From assembly GCA_001949185.1 (NCBI GenBank), contig BDGG01000002.1, positions 2,663,826 to 2,727,825 of the forward strand: a DNA stretch of 64,000 bases. The letters run 5' to 3'. A program made the position numbers and the translations under genes. This document shows positions 48,208 through 60,898 of the stretch, piece after piece. Origin of the DNA: Ramazzottius varieornatus (taxonomy: Eukaryota; Animalia; Tardigrada). Every line of letters begins with the position of its first letter. The first letter of the stretch is position 1. The notes beneath the pieces are model-generated. The model was not told the origin of the DNA and did not search any database. It saw only the letters and a list, made by a program, of their open reading frames with translations.

Positions 48208-51200
48208 CTAACAGCCTTGGATCAGTTCCGAAAGTTTCGTGAACTCCGGCGTGTCCAGCCACTAAATCGGAAAAGTGGTGAATTTTCAGCGTCACGAATG
48301 GTAAACTGCCTTCTCAGACAGTACCTTTATTTCGGTTTTGTCGTTGTCACCGAAGATAGGGCTACTGCTCAGTACCCCCATGCCAAAGTATGGGGTTCCA
48401 GCAGTATCGGTACCGAAGACGCCCAAGTAGCTTCCGGTACCCAGGAAATCATCGTCGATCACTTGTAACGCCGTTATGGTCGTGATGGTACTTTGCGACC
48501 GTACCACGTCAACCGTTGTGGCGGGATAAGTTTTGTTGCCATCTGACATGATGATCGATTTCCCGTCAGCTAAAACCTCGTCAGGGGGTTAGTTCTCGGT
48601 AATCGACTGTACAGTGAAATTTTAAACGTGTAGACAAAGGTTTTCATACCATTCACAACGAAGTAAAGTATTCTTTTGTCGAGGTCCAGTCCATTGTTGG
48701 TCCATGTGGAGTAACTTGACCCTTGAGCTTTCTGTGGCAGGACGGTGTCACAGGCGGCGGGCATGAGACCCACACAGAGGACAGCTACGTTGTGCTAAAA
48801 TGTTAGTTAATAAGGTTGTATGGATGGTGTGAAAGTCTTTTGTGGTAGGAGGGAGTTCTTTCGTACAGAGATTAGGACCATTTGTGGTTGGAAGTTTCCC
48901 GAATTATCTGTGACATTGACTTGAACATATGCTTGGTCCACGTTGGTCAACAGACCAGCCTTTGACCCGGTGAAGAACTGGCTGGTTGGTTGGGGGTTCG
49001 GTACCCGGGACGTCGGTAGGATCTTGCTGCGCTCGTAATCGACGGTATACTCCACCGCACAAGCACCTGGAAAGCCATGGGGTATCTCGTCGATTTGGTA
49101 ACAAGAAGGCCGGAAGGATGGAGGAAACCATAGGTTCTGTTATCACCTCTAAACATCAGCAGCTTGTCGTATCCTGCTGCGAAGTACCCCACGGATTCCT
49201 GGGGACCTTTTGTGCAGAAGTCCTGCAGGGAACATGGGTTAGCGGACATTGGCGTCGTGGTGGGCGGGTTGAAAGTCGTTGTGCACTGTGTGCCATGACC
49301 TGAAATCAGCCAGAAATGTTGCTTGTGTGAGCTAACGGTTATGCTTTGACAATGGTATAACTGATTCCCAAATTCAGGCACTTGTTTGCTTTCACGGAAA
49401 ACTGAATCGCCGAGCTTACTTTGATAAGCCTTTATTTTTTGACAGTGTTTAATAACAGAAATTATCGAGTAAAGCTGATGATCATAATAACAATCAATTT
49501 TTACGGAAATGTAGTGTACGTCATTTGGACTCGTTAGGGTTCTTCACAACAGGAAGCAACATTACTCTCAAGAATTCCCTAAAATTAACGATGTTTTCAA
49601 CCTGTCGAAATTCATTGTGGAATTCACGGAGACTTCACGCAGGTCGATGCCATACTGGTTGATCCGGTGTATTGTGCATTCCGGTTCGACAGATTGATGG
49701 TGGCGGCAAAAACAGTTTGGTACTTGAGCAGCGGTAAATGGTAGCAGACCTGGGTCCCCCATTCTTCCGTCGCGTTTAATTGCCCGTTAGTTACCGCGGG
49801 GGAGTGATCAGACGTCGTGCCCGGCGTTGGCATCAGTAAGCTTGTTGGCAACGCGGTGCTTGTCGGAACTTCCCTTACTGTAATTGAAGATGATGAAGTA
49901 CTGGCGGAAGGAGCCGCGGTAGTTGTTGTTGTACTTGTCAACGTGCTTGTGGACAAAGGTGCGGTAATTGCGGAAACTGGAGTGCTTGGTCGCGGGGAAT
50001 TCGATGACAACGAGCTCGTTGTAGTGCTAGATGAAAAACTGCCACCTGCTGTTGAGCTCAGAAGACTCGACGTTCGCGCAGGCGGCGCTCGGGTGCTAGT
50101 TTGCTGAAGAGTAGAGGTCACCACCGTCGATGGAGTCGAGCTTGAAAACTGCGTTGTGGCACCGGCGAGTTCTTTAGCTGCCAGCTGAACTCTCATCGTT
50201 GAGGTGGCTTGTGTTTTTCGAGCACTGAAAGTCGTCAGCAAGACGCTGGAAGACAGAGATGTCGAAGAACCCGTAGGTGCGGAAGTACTGCTGGACAGAC
50301 TCATCGAGAACGTCGCGCCAGCAGTAGTGATAATTGTCCGCGTAACAGTTGATGGAGTTACGGATAAACTTCTAGTGGTGCACTGACTGGAAGTAGCTGG
50401 TGTTGTTAGTGCTGACGAGACGGTAGTCTTTGACGGTGTGGTCGAAGCTGGAAGTGTAGTTGTCAGTGTAGTCCTGTTTGGTGTACTGGAAGCTACTGTG
50501 GTAACCGTGCTGGAAACCGTCGTGCTGGTTATTGAAGATGTGGTCGTGCTTGTAGTGGACGTCAGTGTTTGTTCTTCGCATTTCACTGCAAGTAGCGAGG
50601 AGACCATTGACTCTATGAATATAATAGCTTGTTGAAAATAATACTTCGAGGTATCTCAACGTACATGGGTCGCATCGGTCAGCATCACACCCGTACTCTT
50701 CGCTAATTTCTCTGCAGTCCATCTCGCTTAGCCGATTCAGCATCGGAATTCGATAGGGAGGATTCTTGACAGTGAAGGCCACTTGACCGGGCTTTGCGAA
50801 GACGGTCTGCTGGTTGTGCGTCACCGAGCAAAGGTCGTAAGCGTGCTTGTTCTTAGTGGTGCCCCAATCATATTTGTCATATGCAAAGGCCATGCCTGCG
50901 AAGAATATCGCGTCCCGTTACCCCAGGTGCCAAACTTGAATCGGATTATTAAGTCATGTGTGTCGTACCGCCTGCGATGCCAGAGGACACAATCTCGATG
51001 AATGCATCACGGTCCGGACGTTGGTGTTCCGTGCGCTTGCCCAGAGCGATAGCAAAATATTTCAGAATGTTATGATGCGTTCCTCCGAGGCATCCGTCCG
51101 AGCCGCGTGCCAGTACCATTGCTTGCTCCGAGCTCTTCTTCGCGTGGTCGGCGTAAACACCGGGGTAGCTTGAACACTGCTTTTCTTCCGTTTTCCTTTA

Positions 51201-53632
51201 AAAAAAAGATTGCTATCGAGAAACAGAAAACGAAGTGAACAAGTTGGAAAAAGATGAAATTTACCCGTCAGGAGCAAAGGGGGTGATCTTCAGCTTATAC
51301 TCGTCCGAGCTTTGCGGGACTTCCACGAACTCTACGCATCCTTTCATATTCTGCATAACAGTTTTGATGGCGCCCTCTACGACGCCTCTTTCGGCACTTG
51401 CTGCAAAATAACCAAATCAGCTCAGATTTTCAACTGGAAATGGGTGGAGTGGTAGGCTGGTCGGTGTGTGCAAGGTGACTTACTGTATGCTTTGTCGATG
51501 TAATAGGGAACGGTATTATCAGGCCATTTCTTGTACTTGGGATCAGCGTTGATTACCCGGAAGTGTTCGCCACCCATGCGTGGCTTCCGACGAGCATTGT
51601 AGACTCCTGTACCAAATGATCCTGCTTCAAGTTTTTCCGGAAGCGAACAAAGACATGGCAAAAGCTTCTGAGCTTGCAATACGCCAGAAAATTTAGTAAA
51701 GTGAAGACTGATCGTTTACCAGAAAACTTTCTACCGGACGACCAATAAAGCGCCGCAGACCATGCGCTTGATTGGTTGATCATTTCAATACGGTGTATGA
51801 CTCGATGAAATTTAACTTCCGTTTTTCTAAGGTATTTGCGTGAATATTTCCTCCCCATGGCGCTCAGATCTTTACCTGCAACAATGGAGCAAGTCGTTTT
51901 GGACGCATCTCTGTCCAGCGTAGTCGGGCTAAGTGTGGTCTTGACAGAAAACTCCGTGGGAGCTTGGGTGTTCGGAACCGAGTAGCAGATTGTCGTTTCC
52001 TTGTCGGAAGAAGTGACTGATGTGATCACGGAAGTGAGCGATGACTGTGTGGAGAACGGCACAGGTGCCGGTGGCTGAGTCACTGCAGGTGGCATAGCGG
52101 GACGAACTTGAGCAGCGCAGTCCACTTGAACAAACAACAAGTCAGCATACATACACAGTATCAATATTCACAAAGTTGTCAGTTGAAATATTCATGGACA
52201 AAGATGAACATGCACTTACAAGGTGAGCACTCCTTCGCGTTACATCCGTATCCAGCTGATATCTCCTGACAGTCGCATTCCGATAGTCGGTCCAGCTGAG
52301 GTATGAAGAAGGGCGGCTGCTTGACCGTGAAGGCTGGACCATTAGCGGCGAAATCCGCCTCGATGTTGTGGGTGATGCTACAGTAATCGTAAGGGCAGAC
52401 CATCAAAGCTTCTTCGGTGGAGTATTTCCGGTACCCGAATTCCAGCATACCTGAAGGGCGGGAATATCGTTTTGGACTTTAGCGAATGAATCTATTGATA
52501 ACTAGCAGTCCAGTCGGGTTCTTGGTCCCTGCTCTAACGTCCTCCACTCACGGGTCCTACGCACGAAATCTGATTTAACTGAGCTTGTACTCAGCGTCTA
52601 ATCAGCTTTCTGATTTCTGATTTTGGCAGGTTTGCCATGAAACTGGCATAAAGTCCAGGTGCAACCTGCTATCGTGAAATCAGCTTTTTTTCTGACGAAC
52701 TAGCGATCCGGCTAGGCTGGTAGATCATTTTCTCAATAAGCGCATGTTTTTAGCCAGTAACAATGGGGAAGTGCGCCACTTGAGACGACGATCTGGTTCA
52801 GTTACTGTCCCAGTCTACAGTAGCTCAGCAAACTTAAGGTTCAGAAGTGGGTTTACGATACCGGGTAGAACATAGTTGCGTTGAATTTCGATGTAGTTGT
52901 CACGATCCGGTCGCTGATGTACGTTTCGAAGTCCGAGGAGTAGTCCGAAGAACTTCATGACTCTGTGTATTGAGCCGTCATCAAGACAGCCACTCTTTCC
53001 TCGTGCAAGAACGGCTCGTTGTTCGAGAGCGCCACTGGCCTTTCCGGCCGCGTACACTCCGGGATACGTGTAGCAGAAGCTTTCTGGTGTGACACTACGA
53101 GAAATTAGAGGATGTAAGATTGATTTGCCGAAGGTTTTTTTGAAGGTGGAAAACATTACCCGTCATTTTGGAATGGTGTGATCTTGACCTTGTAGCGCGG
53201 GTCGGAGGCCGGAACTTCGACGAAGATCACACAGTTGTGAATGTCCGAGACAACCCGCAGGATACTCATACGAATCAGCTGCTCTTCCTGTAACGTATAC
53301 CCGGGGTCTATGTAAAAGTAGACTTTGTTGTTGGGCCATTTTTTGATCTGTTGATTCTGGTTGTAGACCCGAGTTTTAAACGGTGTCATTCGTCTTCGGA
53401 AATCCTCAAAGTCGTCGGCTACAGAACGAAAAAGTGGTTGTTAGTGCGCGAATTGAATTTTCCTACCAAGAAAATTCGTAGAAAGCTTCAATTCTTGGTG
53501 ACTTGCGGATGCGTTCAAGACAAATGTTGACGTATTGAGACTTCGCATACCAGACTTCACCGCTGAGACCTGCACATCCAACCATAAAGCAAAGTAAATC
53601 ATCGAAACAACGAGGTCCCTTTTTCTGACCAT
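48208..53632 (-). CDS. Secreted multidomain protein B: signal peptide, two non-catalytic astacin-like domains, Ser/Thr mucin-like tract, C-terminal hemopexin-like domain
   Basis: ATG 53632 starts a hydrophobic leader. Phase-compatible exons give KKWPNNKVYFYID..GLRNVHQRPDRD..YDYCSITHN, a linker, KKWPDNTVPYYID..GKRTEHQRPDRD..YDLCSVTHN, a ~300-aa S/T tract and then NPC..KLLMFRGACAVEY..LIQGC*. The junction 49656>49299 is inferred. Confidence 0.78.
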
Positions 53633-53989
53633 CTTTGAGCGTGCCTTTTCAAAGGACCAGTTCAACCCGTAAGAGATCGTAACGTGTGAGTCTTCCGAAG
53701 CGAATTATTGAAGTTGATTGTAACCGCTTTGGACTCCAACGAGAAGACAAAACTTTTCTCCTACCTCCGGGAACAGAGAACATTCACGGAATATTATGCA
53801 ACATGTTCGTGCTTGAAGAACACTTTAACTAACCGGATAGTGAACTGTGGAAACCATATAAAGCATGCAGTAGCTCATCAATAAACACTTCAACACTAAA
53901 ATTTCAAGTGAAGTCGCAAAGAGGCAAGCAATAATTTAGAAAGCAACAGCAGGAAACAAACTTAACAAGCATCGAAAGCGCAGTCAGTT

Positions 53990-56900
53990 TCAGTTCAGAT
54001 GGCGAGCTCTGTTTTTGCTGGCGGCAGTGGTACCAGCGCAACAACGTTTAATTCTTTCTAGACCGGGTATGAAATCCACTGGTGGGCTAGCCGGTGTGAC
54101 TTCGGGTACCGGTGTCGCTAAGTTTGGATCATGCTCTGGCGTCATCTCCTGAAAGATGGCATCGGTGGGCGTCGTATTCTCTGCCGTCGTGGTAGCGGTG
54201 CTCGAGGTTCCAGTATTTGGGGTAGTTGGCGCAGTCGTGGTGGTTACGGAAGACGAAGCGCTGCTCACCATGGTGAACTCAGAAGGAACTGGAGGAGTCG
54301 TAGACGGTATGGTACTGGGAGAGGTGTTGGATGGTTGCGGGCTGGCGGTCATCTCAGGTGTTGGAACCTCAGTCGATGGAACCAGAGGAGTCGTAGACGG
54401 TATGGTACTGGGAGAGGTGTTGGATGGTTGCGGGCTGGCGGTCATCTCAGGTGTTGGAACCTCAGTCGAAAGAACCGGAGGATTTGTCTGAATGGTAGCG
54501 GCGCTGGTCCGTCCTGAGGCAGGAGAAACATCTGACGTTGTAGAAGTCATCCGACTAGCTGTGATCTGCGTCATTCCTTGCGGTGCGTTGGGGACATCGT
54601 TTTTACCTATGGAGCCTGTCGCCGGTTTGGATGGCAGTGAATCCGTGGTGATGGAACCAATGGTCACTGTGGTAGTGGAAGCGGCTTGACTTACGACGGT
54701 AGTCTGTTGCGATGTGATTGGTTGTTGCTCCGAAACGGCTGTAGGAAAAACGGCTGGCTCGGGTTCGGCAAGCCGGGAGACTCCCGATATCGTGCTACTG
54801 CTGGCATCAACAGTGGTCGGCGTAGCCGGAGTTGTAGTAGTGGGTGTGGTGGAAGATATCGTGCTGTCAGGGCTCGAAGCTGGGCTGGAAGCTGGGCTTG
54901 AAACTGGACTTGAAGTAGCACCAGTTGTACCATCTGGAAAAGAACATGAAAGTAATGAAAGTACGCGGTAAAGAACGACCAGAATATGGTCAATTGATGC
55001 TTCACCGATGAGATCGACTGCACTGTTGAAATGTGAAGCGACAGCGGAAATAACTTTGTCAATAGCAGATTTTGTTCGATGATTGTGTTCATTGAAACAG
55101 ATCAGTTCGATAAGAGAGGCAGTACTGCATTACGGAGTACACTTTAATCGTAAACTTTTCAGAACCATGATGTGAGTCTGCATGACGTACTAAAGGATAA
55201 AGCGAATTGCAAAAAGCAGGGAGATACGTCAAACTAATTCGTTATTTTCCGCAGTGTGTACACTAATGCTTTGCTGTTGTTTTACCGGTTGAGGCAGAAG
55301 TTGTCGCCGCATCCGAGGTCGATTGATCTGAACTCGCAGAGGACCCCGTGCTCGTCTTGTCCGTAGCAGCCGACGACGTTTCACTCGGTGGTGCAGGGCC
55401 GTCGCCTCCCAGTGGTACATCCGGCAACGGTGGTGCGACTTCTGGAGCCTTCGAGCTCGTTGAATCGGCACCGGGCTTCGACGGGGTGGACTTGCCGTCG
55501 GAAGGAAGACCACTTGGAGCAGCGGTCGAGGCTGTTGTGGGCTCCTCCATTCCACCACCTGCACCACTTGGGCCACCACTGGAAGCCGCACTGGACGAAG
55601 CAGAGGGTGTCGTTGAGTCTCCAGCACTACTGGAGCCGGATGTCGATCCGTCCTTGGGAGTTGTCGATTGTCCTGCTTGGGGTTTTTCAGAGCCTCCACT
55701 TCCCCCGCTACTGGAGCCTGAACTGGAAGGCATAGTAAGAGTTGTTGGTCCACTGCTTCCAGCTGAAGAATCTGCGGGCGTGCTTTCACCTTTACCAGTC
55801 GAGCCACTTGAGCCGCCTGAGGAACCAGATGATGCCATAGAGTCACCCGGCTTGGTCGGACCCGATGGTGTTGTGGCCGAGCTAGAGTCACCAGCGGACG
55901 ATGATGCCCCGCCACCGTCACCCGGTTTCGTCGAGCCTGTGCTAGAGTCAGATCCTCCTGAACCTCCAGAGGACCCGGGGCACGCCGAAGTGGGACCGCT
56001 GGAGCCGCCACCTGATGCAGTGCTATCACCTGCGCTGGAGCTACCAGATGACCCGGTACTAGGCGTGGTACTATCTTCTGGTTTGGTACTGCCACTTGAT
56101 CCCGAGCTACCACCCGGAGCGGTACTTGGTGTGGTACTATCACCAGCTGCAGTGCTGCCACCTGCGCTTGAGCTTTCAGATGACCCGGTACTATCTCCTG
56201 GTTTGGTACTGCCACTTGATCCTGAGCTACCACCTGGAGCGGTACTTGGTGTAGTACTATCACCAGCTGCAGTGCTGCCACCTGCGCTTGAGCTTTCAGA
56301 TGACCCGGTACTATCTCCTGGTTTGGTACTGCCACTTGATCCTGAGCTACCACCTGGAGCGGTACTTGGTGTAGTACTATCACCAGCTGCAGTGCTGCCA
56401 CCTGCGCTTGAGCTTTCAGATGACCCGGTACTATCTCCTGGTTTGGTACTGCCACTTGATCCTGAGCTACCACCTGGAGCGGTACTTGGTGTAGTACTAT
56501 CACCAGCTGCAGTGCTGCCACCTGCGCTCGAGCTACCAGATGACCCGGTACTAGGCGTGGTACTGTCTCCCGGTTTAGTGCTGCCACTTGATCCCGAGCT
56601 ACCACCCGGAGCGGTACTTGGTGTGGTACTATCACCAGCTGCAGTGCTGCCACCTGCGCTCGAGCTACCAGATGACCCGGTACTAGGCGTGGTACTGTCT
56701 CCCGGTTTAGTGCTGCCACTTGATCCCGAGCTACCACCCGGAGCGGTACTTGGTGTGGTACTATCACCAGCTGCAGTGCTGCCACTGGAGCCTCCGCTCA
56801 GAGAAGTGCTTCCGCCAGGTCCAGCAGATGATGAATCGGACGAGTTCGCGCCTGGAGAAGTCATGCCGTCCGACGAACCACTGCTTCCAGATGAAGCCGA

Positions 56901-59900
56901 GGGCGCCGTGGTTGATCCATCGGAAGAACCAGAGGACCCGGAAGAGTTCGAAGGAGCCCCTGATGACGCAGGTGTAGTAGAGCTACCATTCGAGCTGGTA
57001 CCAGTTGACGACGCACTGGAACTACCACCAGCGCCACCTGCGGGCGTGGACGATCCATCACTGCTACCACCAGGTGACATGGTGGTGAGTGTGCCGTTCG
57101 ATCCTCCTTGAGACGTAGTCTGGTTCTGCATGCAAGGGCATACGAAAGGCGTGGAGCTGCCTCCAGGACTCACGGTTGTAGGGCTCGATTCGTTGCCACC
57201 GGCGAAGGTTGGGAAGACAGGGGACATTGGAGTGGTGGGCACGTCGCCGCCACCTGGCGCGCATGTGGTAGTTGCGACTGTCATGAAGGTGGTCGGTGTT
57301 GAAGCTCCATCGCCGCTGCCAATGGCAGGGGTCATGTCACCGGGGAATGTGGTGGAGAAGGTGGTAGGTGTGGTGACGGGTGGCATCTCGTAGCAAACGG
57401 TCGACATACCGGCTGGGGAGGTAATCACGGTGGTCGGGATGGACGTCATAGTGGTGGTCATGGGGGTTTGAGGTACCCCGGTGACGATCTGCGGGGTGGG
57501 GCCTTGTGTCATAGTGGTGGTCATGAGGGTTTGTGGTACACCGGTGATGATCTGCGGGGTGGGGCCTTGTGGTAAACCTGACGAGGGCGTGGTGGTCATC
57601 ATACCATTCATCGGCTGACCGGGTTCCGCTGGCTTCTGCATGGCGGCGCAATTCGCTACACGGCAAAAAGGTTCACTGTCAGATACTATTGGTTTCATAA
57701 AAGTCAGACAATGTCAAAATTTCGATGATGAGTGGCTTACTCGGCATGCATCGTTCGGCAGGGCAGCCATAAACTACACTAAGTTCTTTGCAGTCACATT
57801 CGGACAGTTGGTCGACACGAGGAATGAAGTACGGTGGCTGGAGGACTTGAAAGACAGGGGTGCCAGGGCTGATCGAGTAATCGTCGATCTTGTTGTGCGT
57901 GATGGAACAGTAGTCGTACGCGCAAGGAAGCGACGAGTTTTTTTGAGTGTATTTCTGGTAGGCGATCTGCAGGTTTGGTCGGACGTTACCGGTGTTGACG
58001 GATATGAACTGATCGCGGTCCGGACGCTGATGGACGTTGCGAAGACCCAACACGATCGAGAAACTGCAACACCACACAAGGAATGAAAAATAGTCCCGTT
58101 TCCTCAAGGTGAGAGATTAACCCTACAATTTCATCAGAGGATGAAGTGTTCCATCAAAGCATCCATCAGGCCCGCCAGTCAAAACCATATCTTGTTCGGT
58201 CCTTCCTGACTGCAGGAAGCCTTTGTAAGCGCCTGGGTAAGAGTGACAAGTCTTTAAGGCAGGATTGGCACTATAGAAAAAGGGAAAACGTTACATGGAT
58301 GACCGTACGTAACTTCGCTCCTGACTGTCACAGAACAGTACTACTCCTTTTCGGTAGGCTTACGTTTGGATGGAGCCAGTGCTGGGTGTGATTTTTATCT
58401 TGTACAGCGGGCTACTAGCGTCGACTTCCGTAAACTTAACACATCCATTCAGGTCGCTCATCACTTTGGCCATGGCTGCTTTGATCATCGCCTTATCCTG
58501 TTCACCTAAGAAAAAAAACAATACACTTCACTTTAGCCATAAGAGAACTTCACGTTCAATGTCAGTAGACTTCCGGTACGACATACTGTACGACGCATCC
58601 ATGTAGTAGTAGACGGTATTCTGGGGCCACTTCAAAAAGTTCGGGTCAGCATTGACGATTCTGAAGTGCCAGGCTTTGTGTCGTTGATCACGTGCTTTGC
58701 CACTGGCTTCGCTGGGCATCGTCACCGCTCCGGTGGTTGTTATTGCGCACTGAGCTCCCGGTGAACTATTCGCTCCACCACCTGCCGAAGAGCCGCCCAG
58801 GCTACCCGAGCCCGCCGTGCTTCCTGAACTTCCACCTAATCCCGACGAAAAGCCACCATGCCAGCTGGTGCCAGGACCTAATAGGTTGCCCGGTCTGGAT
58901 CCGGAATTCATGGAACCTGCCGAAGGGCCCGAACTTCCAAACGAACCACTGGATCCCGATCCAGCTCCTGAACCAGAACCACTAAAAAGACACCACAATA
59001 AAAATCCTTAAACCGAAATCTGACTTGAAATATATGTTGTTACTATGTATTTATTTCTTTATCAATGACGAGTTAATCCAGGTGTCTGAAAGCAACGTCT
59101 TTTCTACCTCTGTCCTGACGCAGCTGGTGTCGTCGACGAAGAGCCCAGACTACTGCTGGAACCTGCGCTCGAGCTTCCGGAAGAGGGAGCAGTTGAGCCA
59201 CCTCCCCAGAACCCATTAGGCATGATGGCAGTAGTGACTGATCCACCGGCAGATATAGGTGGTCCGCTGAAGCAGATCGTGTTACTACCGGCACCCGTCG
59301 GCACAGTGGTCTGCATTCCGCCCGCTGACGACATGATGATAGGTGGCGTCATGGATGGAACCGGAGTCTGCATGCCGGAGTTCATGTTGCTCATGGGAAG
59401 CGGGCCGGGCTGTGAGGAGATGGGCGTTGTGGTAGCTAGAGGTTGGCTAGGCGGTTGAGTCTGCGGGGTTGGTGGCGTCTGGATGGGACCTGAGGGGACC
59501 GCCGGTGAGGTGTTGCTTTCTGACACGGGAATGTTCATGTCGCTAGAGACAGCTTGTCCGCCCATGCTTTGCGGGGTGGTGGCTGTGGTGGTAGTCGGCG
59601 TTGGTCTTTGCTGGGAAGCGCAGTCGACTAGCGTAAAAAAGCTGGGTCAGTATCGCTACTATGTCACGCCTAAGTCTCTCAGAAAAAAATCACAGCATTT
59701 GCAGTTTATTTTACAGGGCGTTAATTTTCACTTCTCACCACCTCTGGCAACGCGCCAAGGATATACTGTAACGAACAAAGAACCGGCTTACCTTTTTCGC
59801 ACTGGCTGCTGGCACAACCGTACATGGTACTCAATTCCTGGCAGTCACACGTGCTGAGCTTATCCAGTTTGGGGATGAAACCGGGTGGTCCCATCACCGT

Positions 59901-60898
59901 GAAAGCTTGCATGCCTTCCTTGGCGTAGTCGGTGGGCTGGTTGTGGGTAATGCTGCAATAGTCGTAAGGACAGGCCGCGAATGCTTCGGAACCATCGTAC
60001 AGCTTGTACGCCATCTTCATGTCTGTAGGAAACCAACCATTTTCAGAATCCCCGTCACAGAAGAAAACCGTAATGTGAAGTCTCGTGTTCCAGGTTCACC
60101 GTCTGTCTTACCGTCCTGAAGAGCTGCGTCGTTCATTTGAATATAACTATCTCGATTCGGCCGCTGATGTTCATTCCTTTTTCCCAGAACTGTAAGACAA
60201 TCGTTTTAGGATTTCATGACAAAGGAGTATTCATGACCGAGAAATATCCCGTTTTACCCAGAGCAAAGTATTTCATGAGCGAATGCAGGCTTCCGTCAAA
60301 GCAGCCGCTTTTTCCTCTTGCAAGAACCAGGTTCTGCTCGTTCGTTCCCATCTCGGGACCTTTCGCTAGCTTGCCAGGAAACGTGTAGCATTTCCCTTCT
60401 GGAGCTCTGAAAATAACATTGCTCACATCTATGATGTCCAGCGTAGATCTTAGGCCATAATGTACCCGGGAGATTGCGTGGGTGTGATGCTGACTTTGTA
60501 CTCCGGCGAGTCTTTCGACACTTCCTTGAATTTGATGCATCGCTTCAGTTGCATCATAACCGCGAGCATAGCCTGTCTGATTAGCGCCTGTTCCGTGGGA
60601 CCTGAAATGGTTGACACCTTTCAGAGACATTCGAAAAGTGGGACCAGGAAGTTTTCGACTAACTGTAGCTAGGGTCGATGTAGAACGGAACTTCGTTGTT
60701 TGTCCATGGTACGAAATTCTGGTTCATGTTGATCAGTCGAGTATGTCGTTCAGGCTGCATCATGACACCGTTCACGTTGACTGGAATAATAAATAAAAAT
60801 TAGACATTGATCCAGCCGAAATTATCCGTATGAATTGATTCACCGAAGGTGAGAACACACGTCAGCGTAAATAAGAATAGCATTCGGAGTTTCTCCAT
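53990..60898 (-). CDS. Secreted multidomain protein A: signal peptide, two non-catalytic astacin-like domains, very long Ser/Gly/Thr/Pro repeat tail
   Basis: ATG 60898 starts MEKLRMLFLFTLTCVLTF|VNVNG. Domain 1: VPWTNNEVPFYID..GKRNEHQRPNRD..YDYCSITHN. A P/T/S/G linker follows. Domain 2: LKWPQNTVYYYMD..GLRNVHQRPDRD..YDYCSITHN. An ~800-aa repeat exon splices (ACC G|gtaaaa..ttccag|AT) to a last S/T/P exon ending at 53990. Confidence 0.8.
54289..54468. repeat. Coding tandem duplication, 81-bp unit
   Basis: Two near-identical copies encoding STEVPTPEMTASPQPSNTSPSTIPSTTP. Confidence 0.85.
56020..56785. repeat. Coding minisatellite of 120-bp and 132-bp units in gene A
   Basis: Lines 56161-56520 repeat with a period of 120 and are almost identical. 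The flanking units carry a 12-bp (TPST) insert. The unit encodes GGSTAAGDSTTPSTAPGGSSGSSGSTKPGDST(TPST)GSS(G/E)SSSA. Confidence 0.95.

What the first reader, a model, noticed from the sequence alone, without database searches (positions are those of the whole stretch)
50660..60898. Family of catalytically dead astacin domains built into giant mucin-like secreted proteins
Seen: four astacin-like domains in two tandem genes. The canonical HExxHxxGxxHEHxRxDRD is replaced by KYFALVLGKRNEHQRPNRD, KFFSIVLGLRNVHQRPDRD, KFFGLLLGLRNVHQRPDRD and KYFAIALGKRTEHQRPDRD, so all three Zn-binding His and the catalytic Glu are lost. The Met-turn SxMHY becomes CS(I/V)THN, losing Met and the Tyr ligand, and new conserved cysteines appear (YD[Y/L]C, LSx[C/M]DC, YGC..C). 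The same substitutions recur in four divergent domains with open frames and intact splice sites, which implies selection for a non-proteolytic role. Inference: a pseudo-protease/mucin system acting as a scaffold, substrate trap, inhibitor decoy or cross-linker in cuticle, egg coat or mucus, possibly relevant to water retention.
Basis: partly seen in the sequence, partly recalled or inferred. Interest (0 to 1): 0.85.

Follow-up and report, generated by a model that had tools for sequence, protein, structure and literature searches.

The report
Zinc-less astacin domains in tardigrade mucins
Two neighbouring genes of the tardigrade Ramazzottius varieornatus encode secreted, mucin-like proteins carrying four astacin-protease-fold domains that have lost every catalytic and zinc-binding residue. 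They belong to a large, conserved, tardigrade-only family of such "dead" proteases that has apparently not been described.

Summary
On the minus strand of window 49.6-60.9 kb lie two adjacent genes of Ramazzottius varieornatus.

- **Gene A:** my model has 13 exons and 1,877 aa: signal peptide, domain D1, a Ser/Thr/Pro/Gly linker, D2, and a tail of about 1,100 aa.
- **Gene B:** this is RvY_04335. It encodes a signal peptide and D3, followed either by D4 plus a mucin tail or by a hemopexin-like propeller (alternative splicing).
- **Astacin homology:** all four domains are astacin (M12A) homologues by Pfam. The D3 model matches BMP1 and astacin at Z 21-22.
- **Active site:** H92/E93/H96/H102 are replaced by K/(Y,F)/(L,I)/(N,T). 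Met-turn Met147 and Tyr149 are replaced by Thr and Asn.
- **Transcription:** spliced RNA-like contigs from three studies confirm every gene B intron and gene A's last intron. D1 and D2 splicing is predicted only.
- **Family:** the four domains belong to one clade (SH-aLRT 98). The replacement residues and four new cysteines are themselves conserved in it. At least 18 such domains occur in this genome. All named members are from three eutardigrade genera. A recent paralogue pair gives dN/dS of 0.12-0.20.

Loss of catalysis is a sequence inference. A non-proteolytic binding or scaffold role in a secreted glycoprotein matrix is also inferred. Any link to water retention is untested. Other first-stage notes of this scan flagged the same family elsewhere in this genome.

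The parts
60844..60898 (-). Gene A exon 1: ATG at 60898 and a hydrophobic signal peptide (18 aa plus 1 base)
   Evidence: Read directly from the sequence. The donor is GTGAAT and the phase is 1.
59792..60780 (-). Dead astacin domain D1 (gene A exons 2-6). Motifs: KYFALVLGKRNEHQRPNRD and CSITHN.
   Evidence: All introns are GT-AG and the frame is open. Pfam Astacin hits two exons weakly, at 12.5 and 17.1 bits. D1 falls in the dead clade, next to the N-terminal domains of P. metropolitanus proteins. Its splicing was not checked with RNA.
58700..59627 (-). Linker 1 (gene A exon 7 and the start of exon 8)
   Evidence: The linker is 66% Ser/Thr/Pro/Gly and carries isolated cysteines.
57741..58699 (-). 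Dead astacin domain D2 (end of exon 8 and exons 9-11). Motifs: KFFSIVLGLRNVHQRPDRD and CSITHN.
   Evidence: Pfam Astacin scores 44.5 bits (E 1.8e-11) on the last exon alone. The model is GT-AG throughout. D2 groups with the C-terminal domains of P. metropolitanus P0001 and P0002.
55286..57685 (-). Gene A exon 12: a mucin-like tail of about 800 aa with tandem repeats
   Evidence: Open frame. Tandem repeats of period 120 nt x 5.8 copies, 95% matching. The whole tail (exons 12-13) is 42% Ser+Thr and 68% Ser/Thr/Pro/Gly. A 1,276-nt RNA contig of run X1 extends 781 nt into it.
54934..55285 (-). Last intron of gene A. If retained, the frame stops at 55263.
   Evidence: The loose end at 54934 in runs X1, X3 and X4 reads as the reverse complement of the tail sequence just before the GTAAAA donor. 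Unspliced contigs covering 54905-55250 are also present in X3 and X4.
53990..54933 (-). Gene A exon 13: a further 314 aa of Ser/Thr/Pro-rich sequence, with the stop at 53990-53992
   Evidence: It is in frame with exon 12 after splicing. RNA contigs cover 53784-54934.
53551..53632 (-). Gene B (RvY_04335) exon 1: ATG at 53632 and the signal peptide
   Evidence: Identical to the N-terminus of GAU92223.1 and GAU92224.1. The joint 53418/53551 appears in three runs.
52220..53418 (-). Dead astacin domain D3 (gene B exons 2-4). Motifs: KFFGLLLGLRNVHQRPDRD and CSITHN.
   Evidence: Pfam scores 50.2 bits over profile 1-189 on the annotated protein. AF2 pLDDT is above 90 for residues 50-280. VIA gives Z 22.0 against BMP1. 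All three introns are confirmed by RNA joints.
51876..52124 (-). Gene B exon 5: a Ser/Thr/Pro linker whose phase-1 donor is spliced either to D4 or to the hemopexin-like exons
   Evidence: Joints 51605/51875 (run X4) and 49297/51874 (runs X1, X3, X4).
50665..51606 (-). Dead astacin domain D4 (gene B exons 6-9, an alternative cassette). Motifs: KYFAIALGKRTEHQRPDRD and CSVTHN. It lacks the extra Cys pair.
   Evidence: All four of its introns are confirmed in runs X1 and/or X4. Pfam gives 19.3 bits on one exon. In the tree it sits next to the second domain of P0003. Against the divergent run X4 it shows 6 non-synonymous and 2 synonymous differences.
49624..50585 (-). Gene B exon 10: the Thr/Ser-rich tail of the long isoform, with the stop at 49624-49626
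   Evidence: Open frame. A contig of run X4 covers 49411-50585. The tail is 49% Ser+Thr.
48208..49299 (-). Alternative 3' exons of gene B, encoding the hemopexin-like C-terminal domain of the annotated isoforms
   Evidence: Residues 353-616 of P0151 map to 49297-48211 in five blocks. VIA gives Z 10.4-11.2 against hemopexin-fold proteins 6ix1, 3oyo and 7rj9 for model residues 374-616. Pfam finds nothing here.

Best explanation
These are two adjacent genes of Ramazzottius varieornatus for secreted, heavily Ser/Thr/Pro/Gly-rich (mucin-like) proteins. The proteins display astacin-fold domains that cannot work as zinc proteases.

The three zinc-binding His, the general-base Glu, the Met-turn Met and the Tyr ligand are replaced by K, Y/F, I/L/V, N, T and N. 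No propeptide is present.

The replacements are fixed across a monophyletic family known so far only from tardigrades. The family also gained four invariant cysteines, probably two extra disulfides. The fold is therefore kept without metal and is under selection.

Most likely (inferred) the former substrate cleft has become a binding site. The domains would then act as non-catalytic recognition or cross-linking modules, displayed singly or in pairs on O-glycosylated stalks. In the short isoform of gene B the domain is paired with a hemopexin-like propeller. The proteins would be part of an extracellular matrix, cuticle or mucus.

Shown: homology, predicted fold, loss of catalytic residues, transcription and splicing, family-wide conservation.

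Inferred: absence of zinc and of activity, glycosylation, the binding role, and the location.
For: - **Motifs and gene models:**
- **Pfam Astacin:**
- **Closest solved sequences:** fish hatching enzymes and BMP1.
- **Predicted structure:** AF2 model with pLDDT above 90 over the domain. Foldseek TM 0.76-0.79. VIA Z 21-22 against BMP1, TLL-1 and astacin.
- **Column statistics over 36 dead and 81 active domains:** H92->K29/R6, H102->N30, M147->T36/36, Y149->N28. New Cys present in 36/36 at four columns.
- **Co-varying fifth Cys pair:** both present in 10 domains, both absent in 24.
- **Single clade:** SH-aLRT 98, nested in a 47-row all-dead clade at 99.
- **Orthologous two-domain proteins in Paramacrobiotus.** All named members come from three eutardigrade genera.
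- **Copy number:** at least 18 distinct dead domains and at least 15 canonical HExxH domains in the loci fetched from this genome.
- **Selection:** dN/dS 0.12-0.20 over 249 codons in a recent paralogue pair.
- **RNA:** spliced contigs from three studies, while the DNA-like run X15 reads through the introns.
- **Composition, repeats and unpaired linker cysteines:**
Against: - No experiment shows lack of zinc or of activity.
- No localisation or ligand data exist, so the binding or scaffold role is inference by analogy with other pseudopeptidases.
No annotated gene A protein was found.
- D4 shows 6 non-synonymous and 2 synonymous differences against a divergent strain, lacks one Cys pair and is skipped in the annotated isoforms. 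It may be under relaxed constraint.
- dS among D1-D4 is saturated, so selection on these four domains themselves is argued from conservation, not from dN/dS.
- The fold prediction used an alignment that included true astacins.
Confidence: 0.6

Rival explanations
1. The dead domains are regulators of the animal's own active astacins (at least 15 HExxH copies in the genome). They would keep the substrate-binding cleft and act as substrate traps, or as decoys for inhibitors or activators. This would protect or time the proteolysis of cuticle or egg-envelope proteins, rather than building matrix themselves.
For: Active and dead astacins coexist in roughly equal numbers. Residues lining the former active site are conserved rather than random. 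Pseudopeptidases that regulate their active cousins are a known theme (PMC11266112).
Against: The long mucin tails, tandem domains and hemopexin-like partner look more like matrix or adhesion architecture than like a soluble regulator. No co-expression or interaction data exist. This rival overlaps the best explanation, since both assume binding without cleavage.
Confidence: 0.2
2. The domains are still hydrolases that use a different metal site or mechanism.
For: His173 and His219 are nearly invariant, and Glu172 is common (30 of 36). D1-D4 share an extra His one helical turn before the Lys.
Against: His173, His219 and Glu172 are equally conserved in true astacins, where they are not ligands. 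The extra His is Arg in a third of the clade (H18, R12). No new conserved acidic residue or His cluster appears. The clade-specific invariant residues are K, R, N, T, C, P and F. The general base is an aromatic residue.
Confidence: 0.03
3. The domains are decaying relics: non-functional remains of duplicated protease genes carried along in mucin genes.
For: D4 shows 6 non-synonymous and 2 synonymous differences against a divergent strain, has lost a Cys pair, and is skipped in the major isoforms.
Against: The frames are open with intact splice sites in all four domains. The same replacements are kept in 36 distinct sequences from three genera. D1, D2 and D4 have orthologous partners in Paramacrobiotus. 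dN/dS is 0.12-0.20 in a recent paralogue pair. All ten cysteines are kept in D1-D3. At most this applies to D4.
Confidence: 0.04

Closest known systems
Astacin metallopeptidases (MEROPS M12A; Pfam PF01400): crayfish astacin, BMP1/tolloid, meprins, fish hatching enzymes
   Same: - Homologous over the whole catalytic domain (Pfam 1-189).
- Same predicted fold (Z 21-22).
- The RxDRD motif, the YDY..S.xH segment, the Gly of HExxHxxG, and both ancestral disulfide cysteine pairs are kept.
- Secreted.
   Different: - No HExxHxxGxxH motif, no Met-turn Met and no Tyr ligand.
- No propeptide with an Asp switch.
- A 3-4 residue insertion before the former zinc helix.
- Four to six extra cysteines.
- Fused to mucin-like stalks or a hemopexin-like propeller, instead of CUB, EGF, MAM or ShKT domains.
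Pseudopeptidases of the ADAM family (M12B; ADAM2, 7, 11, 18, 22, 23, 29, 32; unc-71), as reviewed in PMC11266112
   Same: Metzincin-fold domains with substituted zinc ligands and general base. They act through protein-protein interaction rather than catalysis.
   Different: - A different subfamily (adamalysin, not astacin).
- ADAM pseudopeptidases usually keep the Met-turn methionine (PMC11266112), whereas here it is Thr in 36 of 36.
- ADAMs are membrane proteins, whereas these proteins have no membrane anchor.
- That review lists no M12A example.
Matrix metalloproteinases (catalytic domain plus hemopexin-like propeller)
   Same: The short isoform of gene B and many family members have a metzincin-fold domain, a Pro/Thr-rich hinge and a four-blade hemopexin-like domain. 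The full-length MMP-1 and MMP-12 structures align over both parts.
   Different: The N-terminal domain is astacin-type and dead. Pfam does not detect the propeller. The layout is probably convergent.
Secreted mucins
   Same: Signal peptide, very long Ser/Thr/Pro/Gly-rich regions with tandem repeats, and scattered cysteines.
   Different: Pfam found no VWD, CysD, cystine-knot or SEA domain in the pieces scanned. The globular modules are dead astacin domains. Glycosylation was not shown.

Membership tests
Astacin family (M12A, Pfam PF01400): homology and fold | Profile match over the whole catalytic domain above the curated cut-off | tested here: met
   D3 (GAU92223.1) scores 50.2 bits against a cut-off of 22.5, over profile 1-189. 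The last D2 exon scores 44.5 bits. D1 and D4 hit exon by exon at 12-19 bits, below the cut-off when taken singly.
Astacin family (M12A, Pfam PF01400): homology and fold | Astacin three-dimensional fold | tested here: met
   This is a predicted model, not an experimental structure. pLDDT is above 90. VIA gives Z 22.0, rmsd 2.4 A over 193 residues against BMP1, and Z 21.2 against 1ast.
Astacin family (M12A, Pfam PF01400): homology and fold | The two ancestral disulfide cysteine pairs (astacin C42-C198 and C64-C84) | tested here: met
   Cysteines at the aligned columns (gene B residues 90, 261, 121, 150) are present in 86-100% of dead domains and in 74-85% of active domains. The pairing itself was not tested.
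Active astacin metallopeptidase | Zinc-binding consensus HExxHxxGxxH, including the general-base Glu | tested here: not met
   The consensus is K-(Y/F)-x-x-(I/L/V)-x-x-G-x-R-(N/T) in D1-D4 and in 36 distinct clade members. All 81 active domains have H, E, H and H at these columns.
Active astacin metallopeptidase | Met-turn SxMHY with the Tyr zinc ligand | tested here: not met
   The segment reads CS(I/V)THN. Thr is present in 36 of 36 and Asn in 28 of 36. Active domains have Met in 71 of 81 and Tyr in 81 of 81.
Active astacin metallopeptidase | N-terminal propeptide with an Asp switch (FxGD) between the signal peptide and the catalytic domain | tested here: not met
   Only about 10-25 residues separate the signal peptide from the conserved W-P..(V/I)PYY start. 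No FxGD motif is seen in the N-termini of gene A or gene B (read). D2 and D4 are internal domains.
Active astacin metallopeptidase | Zinc content and proteolytic activity | not testable with these tools
   This needs recombinant protein, metal analysis and protease assays.
Pseudopeptidase (non-peptidase homologue under selection) | The enzyme fold is kept, the catalytic residues are lost, and the sequence is conserved and expressed | tested here: met
   Fold. Residue loss. Single conserved clade in three genera. dN/dS 0.12-0.20 in a paralogue pair. Spliced RNA. For D4 alone the selection evidence is inconclusive.
Mucins | Long Pro/Thr/Ser-rich, tandemly repeated regions in a secreted protein | tested here: met
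   The gene A tail is 42% Ser+Thr and 68% Ser/Thr/Pro/Gly over 1,109 aa. Repeats of 120 nt x 5.8 copies. Signal peptides are read from the sequence.
Mucins | Dense O-glycosylation; VWD, CysD, CK or SEA domains of gel-forming or membrane mucins | tested here: inconclusive
   Pfam found no such domain in the tail pieces scanned, but not all of gene A was scanned. Glycosylation cannot be tested here.
Hemopexin-like repeat domain (C-terminus of the gene B short isoform) | Four-blade beta-propeller fold; Pfam Hemopexin repeats | tested here: inconclusive
   VIA gives Z 10.4-11.2 and rmsd 3.5-4.0 A over 168-178 residues against hemopexin-fold proteins. The model there has only moderate confidence (pLDDT 30-90). 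There is no Pfam Hemopexin hit.

The most novel reading that the evidence does not exclude
Tardigrades evolved, from one ancestral astacin, a metal-free protease-fold module in which a lysine takes the place of the zinc ion and extra disulfides hold the cleft. They expanded it to about half of all astacin-fold domains in the genome. Mounted on mucin stalks and hemopexin-like propellers, these modules would form a major, phylum-specific class of extracellular matrix, cuticle or mucus proteins. Their multivalent binding and bound glycan water would contribute to cuticle integrity or to surviving desiccation.
Probability: 0.15. Interest if true: 0.75.

Novelty: new variant of a known kind. Interest (0 to 1): 0.55.

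Why it matters
**A gap in the pseudoprotease literature.** Pseudoproteases are known in several families. For the astacins, neither the 2023 family review (PMC9848320) nor the 2024 pseudopeptidase review (PMC11266112) describes a conserved zinc-less lineage. The astacin review's tree was restricted to sequences with the typical motifs.

**What this finding adds.** There is a whole clade with fixed replacement residues, new disulfide cysteines and new domain partners. It makes up roughly half of the astacin-fold domains found in a tardigrade genome. This offers a natural experiment on how a metzincin fold is stabilised without metal.

**A candidate set of matrix proteins.** The family is a set of candidate tardigrade-specific extracellular matrix or mucus proteins. 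Gene knock-out is, to my knowledge, feasible in this animal.

**An annotation warning.** UniProt names several members "Metalloendopeptidase", although they lack the catalytic residues.

Tried and rejected
- **Annotated gene A protein:** searches of the 5.8-billion-protein set with the tail start and with the last D2 exon found no R. varieornatus entry. This may be a length-window effect, since my model is 1,570-1,877 aa. Gene A's D1 and D2 splicing therefore rests on sequence only.
- **Joined (spliced) models:** they were used only inside local scripts, for alignment, tree and counts. They were not sent to any search or folding tool. Database and Pfam searches were done exon by exon by reference, or with the database protein GAU92223.1. 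No fold was made for D1, D2 or D4.
- **dN/dS among D1-D4:** dS is saturated, so this is uninformative.
- **Automatic pairing of L016 and L017 ORFs:** a first run mixed in non-coding frames. It was discarded and redone on the four coding segments.
- **Pfam on the C-terminal exons and tails:** only chance-level hits.
- **Literature:** searches for tardigrade plus astacin, astacin plus pseudoprotease, RvY_04334 to RvY_04337, tardigrade plus mucin, and Ramazzottius plus M12A found nothing on this family.
- **Alternative metal site:** rejected. No clade-wide new His, Asp or Glu cluster exists.
- **Gene A and gene B as one ORF:** rejected. Three in-frame stops lie between 53990 and 53704.


Full report
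**Organism and place**

The window is G000:C2:2663826-2727825 of a 55.8-Mb genome in 200 contigs. Gene B's product is identical over its first 352 residues to GAU92223.1 and GAU92224.1 (RvY_04335-2 and -3) of Ramazzottius varieornatus. Everything of interest lies on the minus strand.

**Gene models**

I read the sequence, fixed exon borders at GT-AG sites, and checked the frames in a script.

Gene A has 13 exons, from 60898 to 53990, and encodes 1,877 aa.
- An 18-aa signal peptide.
- D1 (exons 2-6).
- A Ser/Pro/Thr/Gly linker (66% of residues are these four).
- D2 (exons 8-11).
- A tail of about 1,100 aa (68% Ser/Thr/Pro/Gly, 42% Ser+Thr), containing 120-nt tandem repeats.

Gene B starts at 53632 and has two forms.
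- The long form has 10 exons and 910 aa: signal peptide, D3, linker, D4, Thr/Ser-rich tail, with the stop at 49624.
- The annotated forms splice the linker exon directly to exons at 49299-48208.

The joined protein models were used only in local scripts. They were not sent to any search or folding tool. Searches were made exon by exon by reference, or with the database protein of gene B.

**RNA evidence**

Contigs of three RNA-like runs from three studies (X1, X3, X4) were laid on 49251-55250.
- They show nine spliced joints with CT..AC ends, which correspond to GT..AG on the minus strand. These match every gene B intron that I had predicted. One acceptor lay 12 nt from my first guess and was corrected to 51606.
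- An alternative joint, 49297/51874, skips D4 and its tail. It appears in all three runs.
- The joint from the linker into D4 was seen in X4. The internal D4 joints were seen in X1 and X4.
- Run X15 reads straight through introns, so it behaves as DNA and serves as a control.
- At 54934 all three RNA runs continue with letters that are the reverse complement of gene A's tail just before a GTAAAA donor. An intron (54934-55285) therefore removes the stop at 55263 and adds a 314-aa exon. Unspliced contigs are also present.
Its splicing is therefore predicted only. It is supported by canonical sites and by intron positions and phases shared with D3 and D4.

**Homology and fold**

- Pfam Astacin (PF01400) matches the last D2 exon alone at 44.5 bits, E 1.8e-11.
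- It matches the three D3 exons in order at profile positions 1-46, 74-118 and 123-189.
- It matches the annotated spliced D3 protein at 50.2 bits over profile 1-189, against a cut-off of 22.5.
- The closest solved sequences are zebrafish and medaka hatching enzymes and BMP1.
- An AlphaFold2 model of GAU92223.1, built with a 41-sequence alignment, has pLDDT above 90 for residues 50-280.
- Foldseek ranks only astacins at the top, with TM 0.76-0.79.
- VIA-align gives Z 22.0, rmsd 2.4 A over 193 residues against BMP1, and Z 21.2 against crayfish astacin.
- The fold claim rests on a prediction whose alignment included true astacins.

**The dead active site**

I aligned 36 distinct dead domains with 81 HExxH domains.

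| Astacin residue | Residue in the dead clade (of 36) |
|---|---|
| H92 | K 29, R 6 |
| E93 | Y, F or L |
| H96 | I, L or V |
| H102 | N 30 |
| Met147 | T 36 |
| Tyr149 | N 28 |

- All 81 active domains have H, E, H, H and Y at the corresponding columns.
- The four window domains follow this pattern. D4 has Thr at the H102 column.
- A 3-4 residue insertion lies between the conserved GC and the former zinc helix.
- The Arg two residues after the Gly, and a Lys in the YK.K.TP strand, are also clade-specific and nearly invariant.
- Four new cysteines are invariant (gene B residues 215, 252, 266, 271).
- A further pair (residues 210 and 250) is either present together (10 domains, including D1-D3) or absent together (24 domains, including D4). 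The two apparent exceptions are explained by a one-residue alignment shift. This pattern suggests disulfides.
- No propeptide or Asp-switch motif precedes the domains.
- No new cluster of His, Asp or Glu appears, so an alternative metal site is unlikely.

**The family**

- Searching this genome with the D2 exon finds 31 matches on many contigs.
- In the fetched loci there are at least 18 distinct CS(I/V)TH domains and at least 15 canonical HExxHxxGxxH domains.
- Against 1.84 billion representative proteins, about 50 of the best 150 hits carry the dead motifs.
- Every one of these that has a name comes from R. varieornatus, Hypsibius exemplaris or Paramacrobiotus metropolitanus.
- Their automatic names include "Peptidase M12A domain-containing protein", "Metalloendopeptidase", "mucin-2-like" and "astacin-like metalloendopeptidase".
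- In a maximum-likelihood tree of 147 domains, the 37 CSxTH domains form one clade (SH-aLRT 98). That clade sits inside a 47-row clade in which no domain has HExxH (99).
- D1 groups with the N-terminal domains of the two-domain P. metropolitanus proteins. D2 groups with their C-terminal domains, with D3 as sister. D4 groups with the second domain of a P. metropolitanus "mucin-2-like" protein.
- The two-domain design therefore predates the split of these genera.

**Selection**

- dS among D1-D4 is saturated, and dN is 0.49-0.58.
- A recent paralogue pair elsewhere in the genome (L016 and L017, 249 codons, 84% amino-acid identity) gives dN/dS of 0.12-0.20.
- Run X4 comes from a slightly divergent strain. 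Among the differences listed, D3 has 0 non-synonymous and 1 synonymous, D4 has 6 and 2, and the Thr/Ser tail has 10 and 8.
- The numbers are small and ten differences were not listed. D4 may nevertheless be less constrained. This fits its missing Cys pair and its alternative inclusion.

**Partner domain**

Residues 374-616 of the short gene B isoform match hemopexin-fold proteins at Z 10.4-11.2. The matches are plant hemopexin-fold albumins and the vitronectin hemopexin-like domain. Full-length MMP structures align over both halves. Model confidence there is moderate and Pfam sees nothing. Several family members share this tail. The layout resembles an MMP built on a dead astacin.

**Interpretation**

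What is shown:
- Secreted mucin-like proteins carry astacin-fold domains that have lost the whole catalytic apparatus.
- The domains keep a conserved, differently furnished cleft and have gained cysteines.
- They are transcribed and spliced.
- They are old, with orthologues in Paramacrobiotus, and are members of a large clade known so far only from tardigrades.

What is inferred:
- The domains hold no zinc and cleave nothing.
- The conserved Lys, Arg, Asn and Thr of the former site stabilise the fold or form a binding site.
- The stalks are O-glycosylated.
- The isolated linker cysteines could make intermolecular bonds.
- The proteins act as binding or cross-linking components of an extracellular matrix, cuticle or mucus.

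A regulatory decoy role towards the animal's active astacins is the main rival. It differs only in the binding target. Nothing here bears on water retention.

**Literature**

The astacin family review (PMC9848320) cites canonical tardigrade astacins. Its tree was restricted to sequences with the typical motifs, and my term search found no mention of inactive or pseudo forms. The pseudopeptidase review (PMC11266112) lists only ADAMs for M12. Searches for tardigrade plus astacin or mucin, and for the gene identifiers, found nothing on this family.

Other first-stage notes of this scan flagged dead astacins at other places in the same genome, and flagged the hemopexin-like tail here. These are unchecked notes that agree with my genome search.

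**Verdict**

This is a real and well-supported feature: a new, lineage-specific, zinc-less variant of the astacin family, fused to mucin-like and hemopexin-like parts. Its function is unknown experimentally. It is of moderate to good interest.

Noticed in passing
window 48208-49299 (-): The alternative 3' exons of RvY_04335 encode a domain whose predicted fold matches hemopexin-like four-blade propellers (Z 10.4-11.2). This gives the short isoform an MMP-like layout on a dead astacin. Pfam does not detect it.
   Followed up: partly
window 54934-55285 (-): The last intron of gene A is both spliced and retained in RNA contigs. Retention ends the protein at 55263. Splicing adds 314 aa ending at 53990.
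   Followed up: yes
window 53551-54321 (-): RNA contigs of three runs run without a break from gene A's last exon, across its stop at 53990 and about 360 nt of non-coding sequence, into gene B's first coding exon. This could be overlapping UTRs, read-through or a shared transcript. Contigs cannot tell these apart.
   Followed up: no
window 49400-54100: Run X4 differs from the window at about 1-2% of positions, so it comes from another strain or a close relative. Its differences are mostly non-synonymous in D4 (6 of 8) and absent or synonymous in D3.
   Followed up: partly
G000:C1:7827208-7827423 (L022), G000:C1:8882533-8882748 (L028), G000:C3:1478847-1479068 (L009); proteins P0155, P0036, P0054, P0074, P0078, P0087: A second group of dead astacins (for example RvY_02803, with KILANVLGLRNEFSRPDRD and no CSITH motif) forms the sister group of the CSxTH clade within the 47-row all-dead clade.
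   Followed up: partly
protein P0080 (OQV24185.1, Hypsibius exemplaris): A 1,244-aa protein named 'Mast/stem cell growth factor receptor Kit' carries three further astacin-like domains with degenerate zinc motifs.
   Followed up: no
proteins P0014, P0017, P0020, P0022, P0152 (UniProt names): UniProt's automatic name 'Metalloendopeptidase' is given to family members that lack all catalytic residues. This is likely an annotation error that will propagate.
   Followed up: no
linkers of gene A and gene B (e.g. window ~59290, ~57400, ~51990, ~49720) and of P0001-P0003, P0009: A short Cys-containing motif, (T)(I/V)C(Y/F)xxP, recurs in nearly every Ser/Thr-rich linker of the family. Its role is unknown.
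   Followed up: no
protein P0006 (1,268 aa): This representative hit matches the D2 exon query in 19 short stretches and has odd Pfam fragments. It is probably a repetitive or artefactual protein.
   Followed up: no
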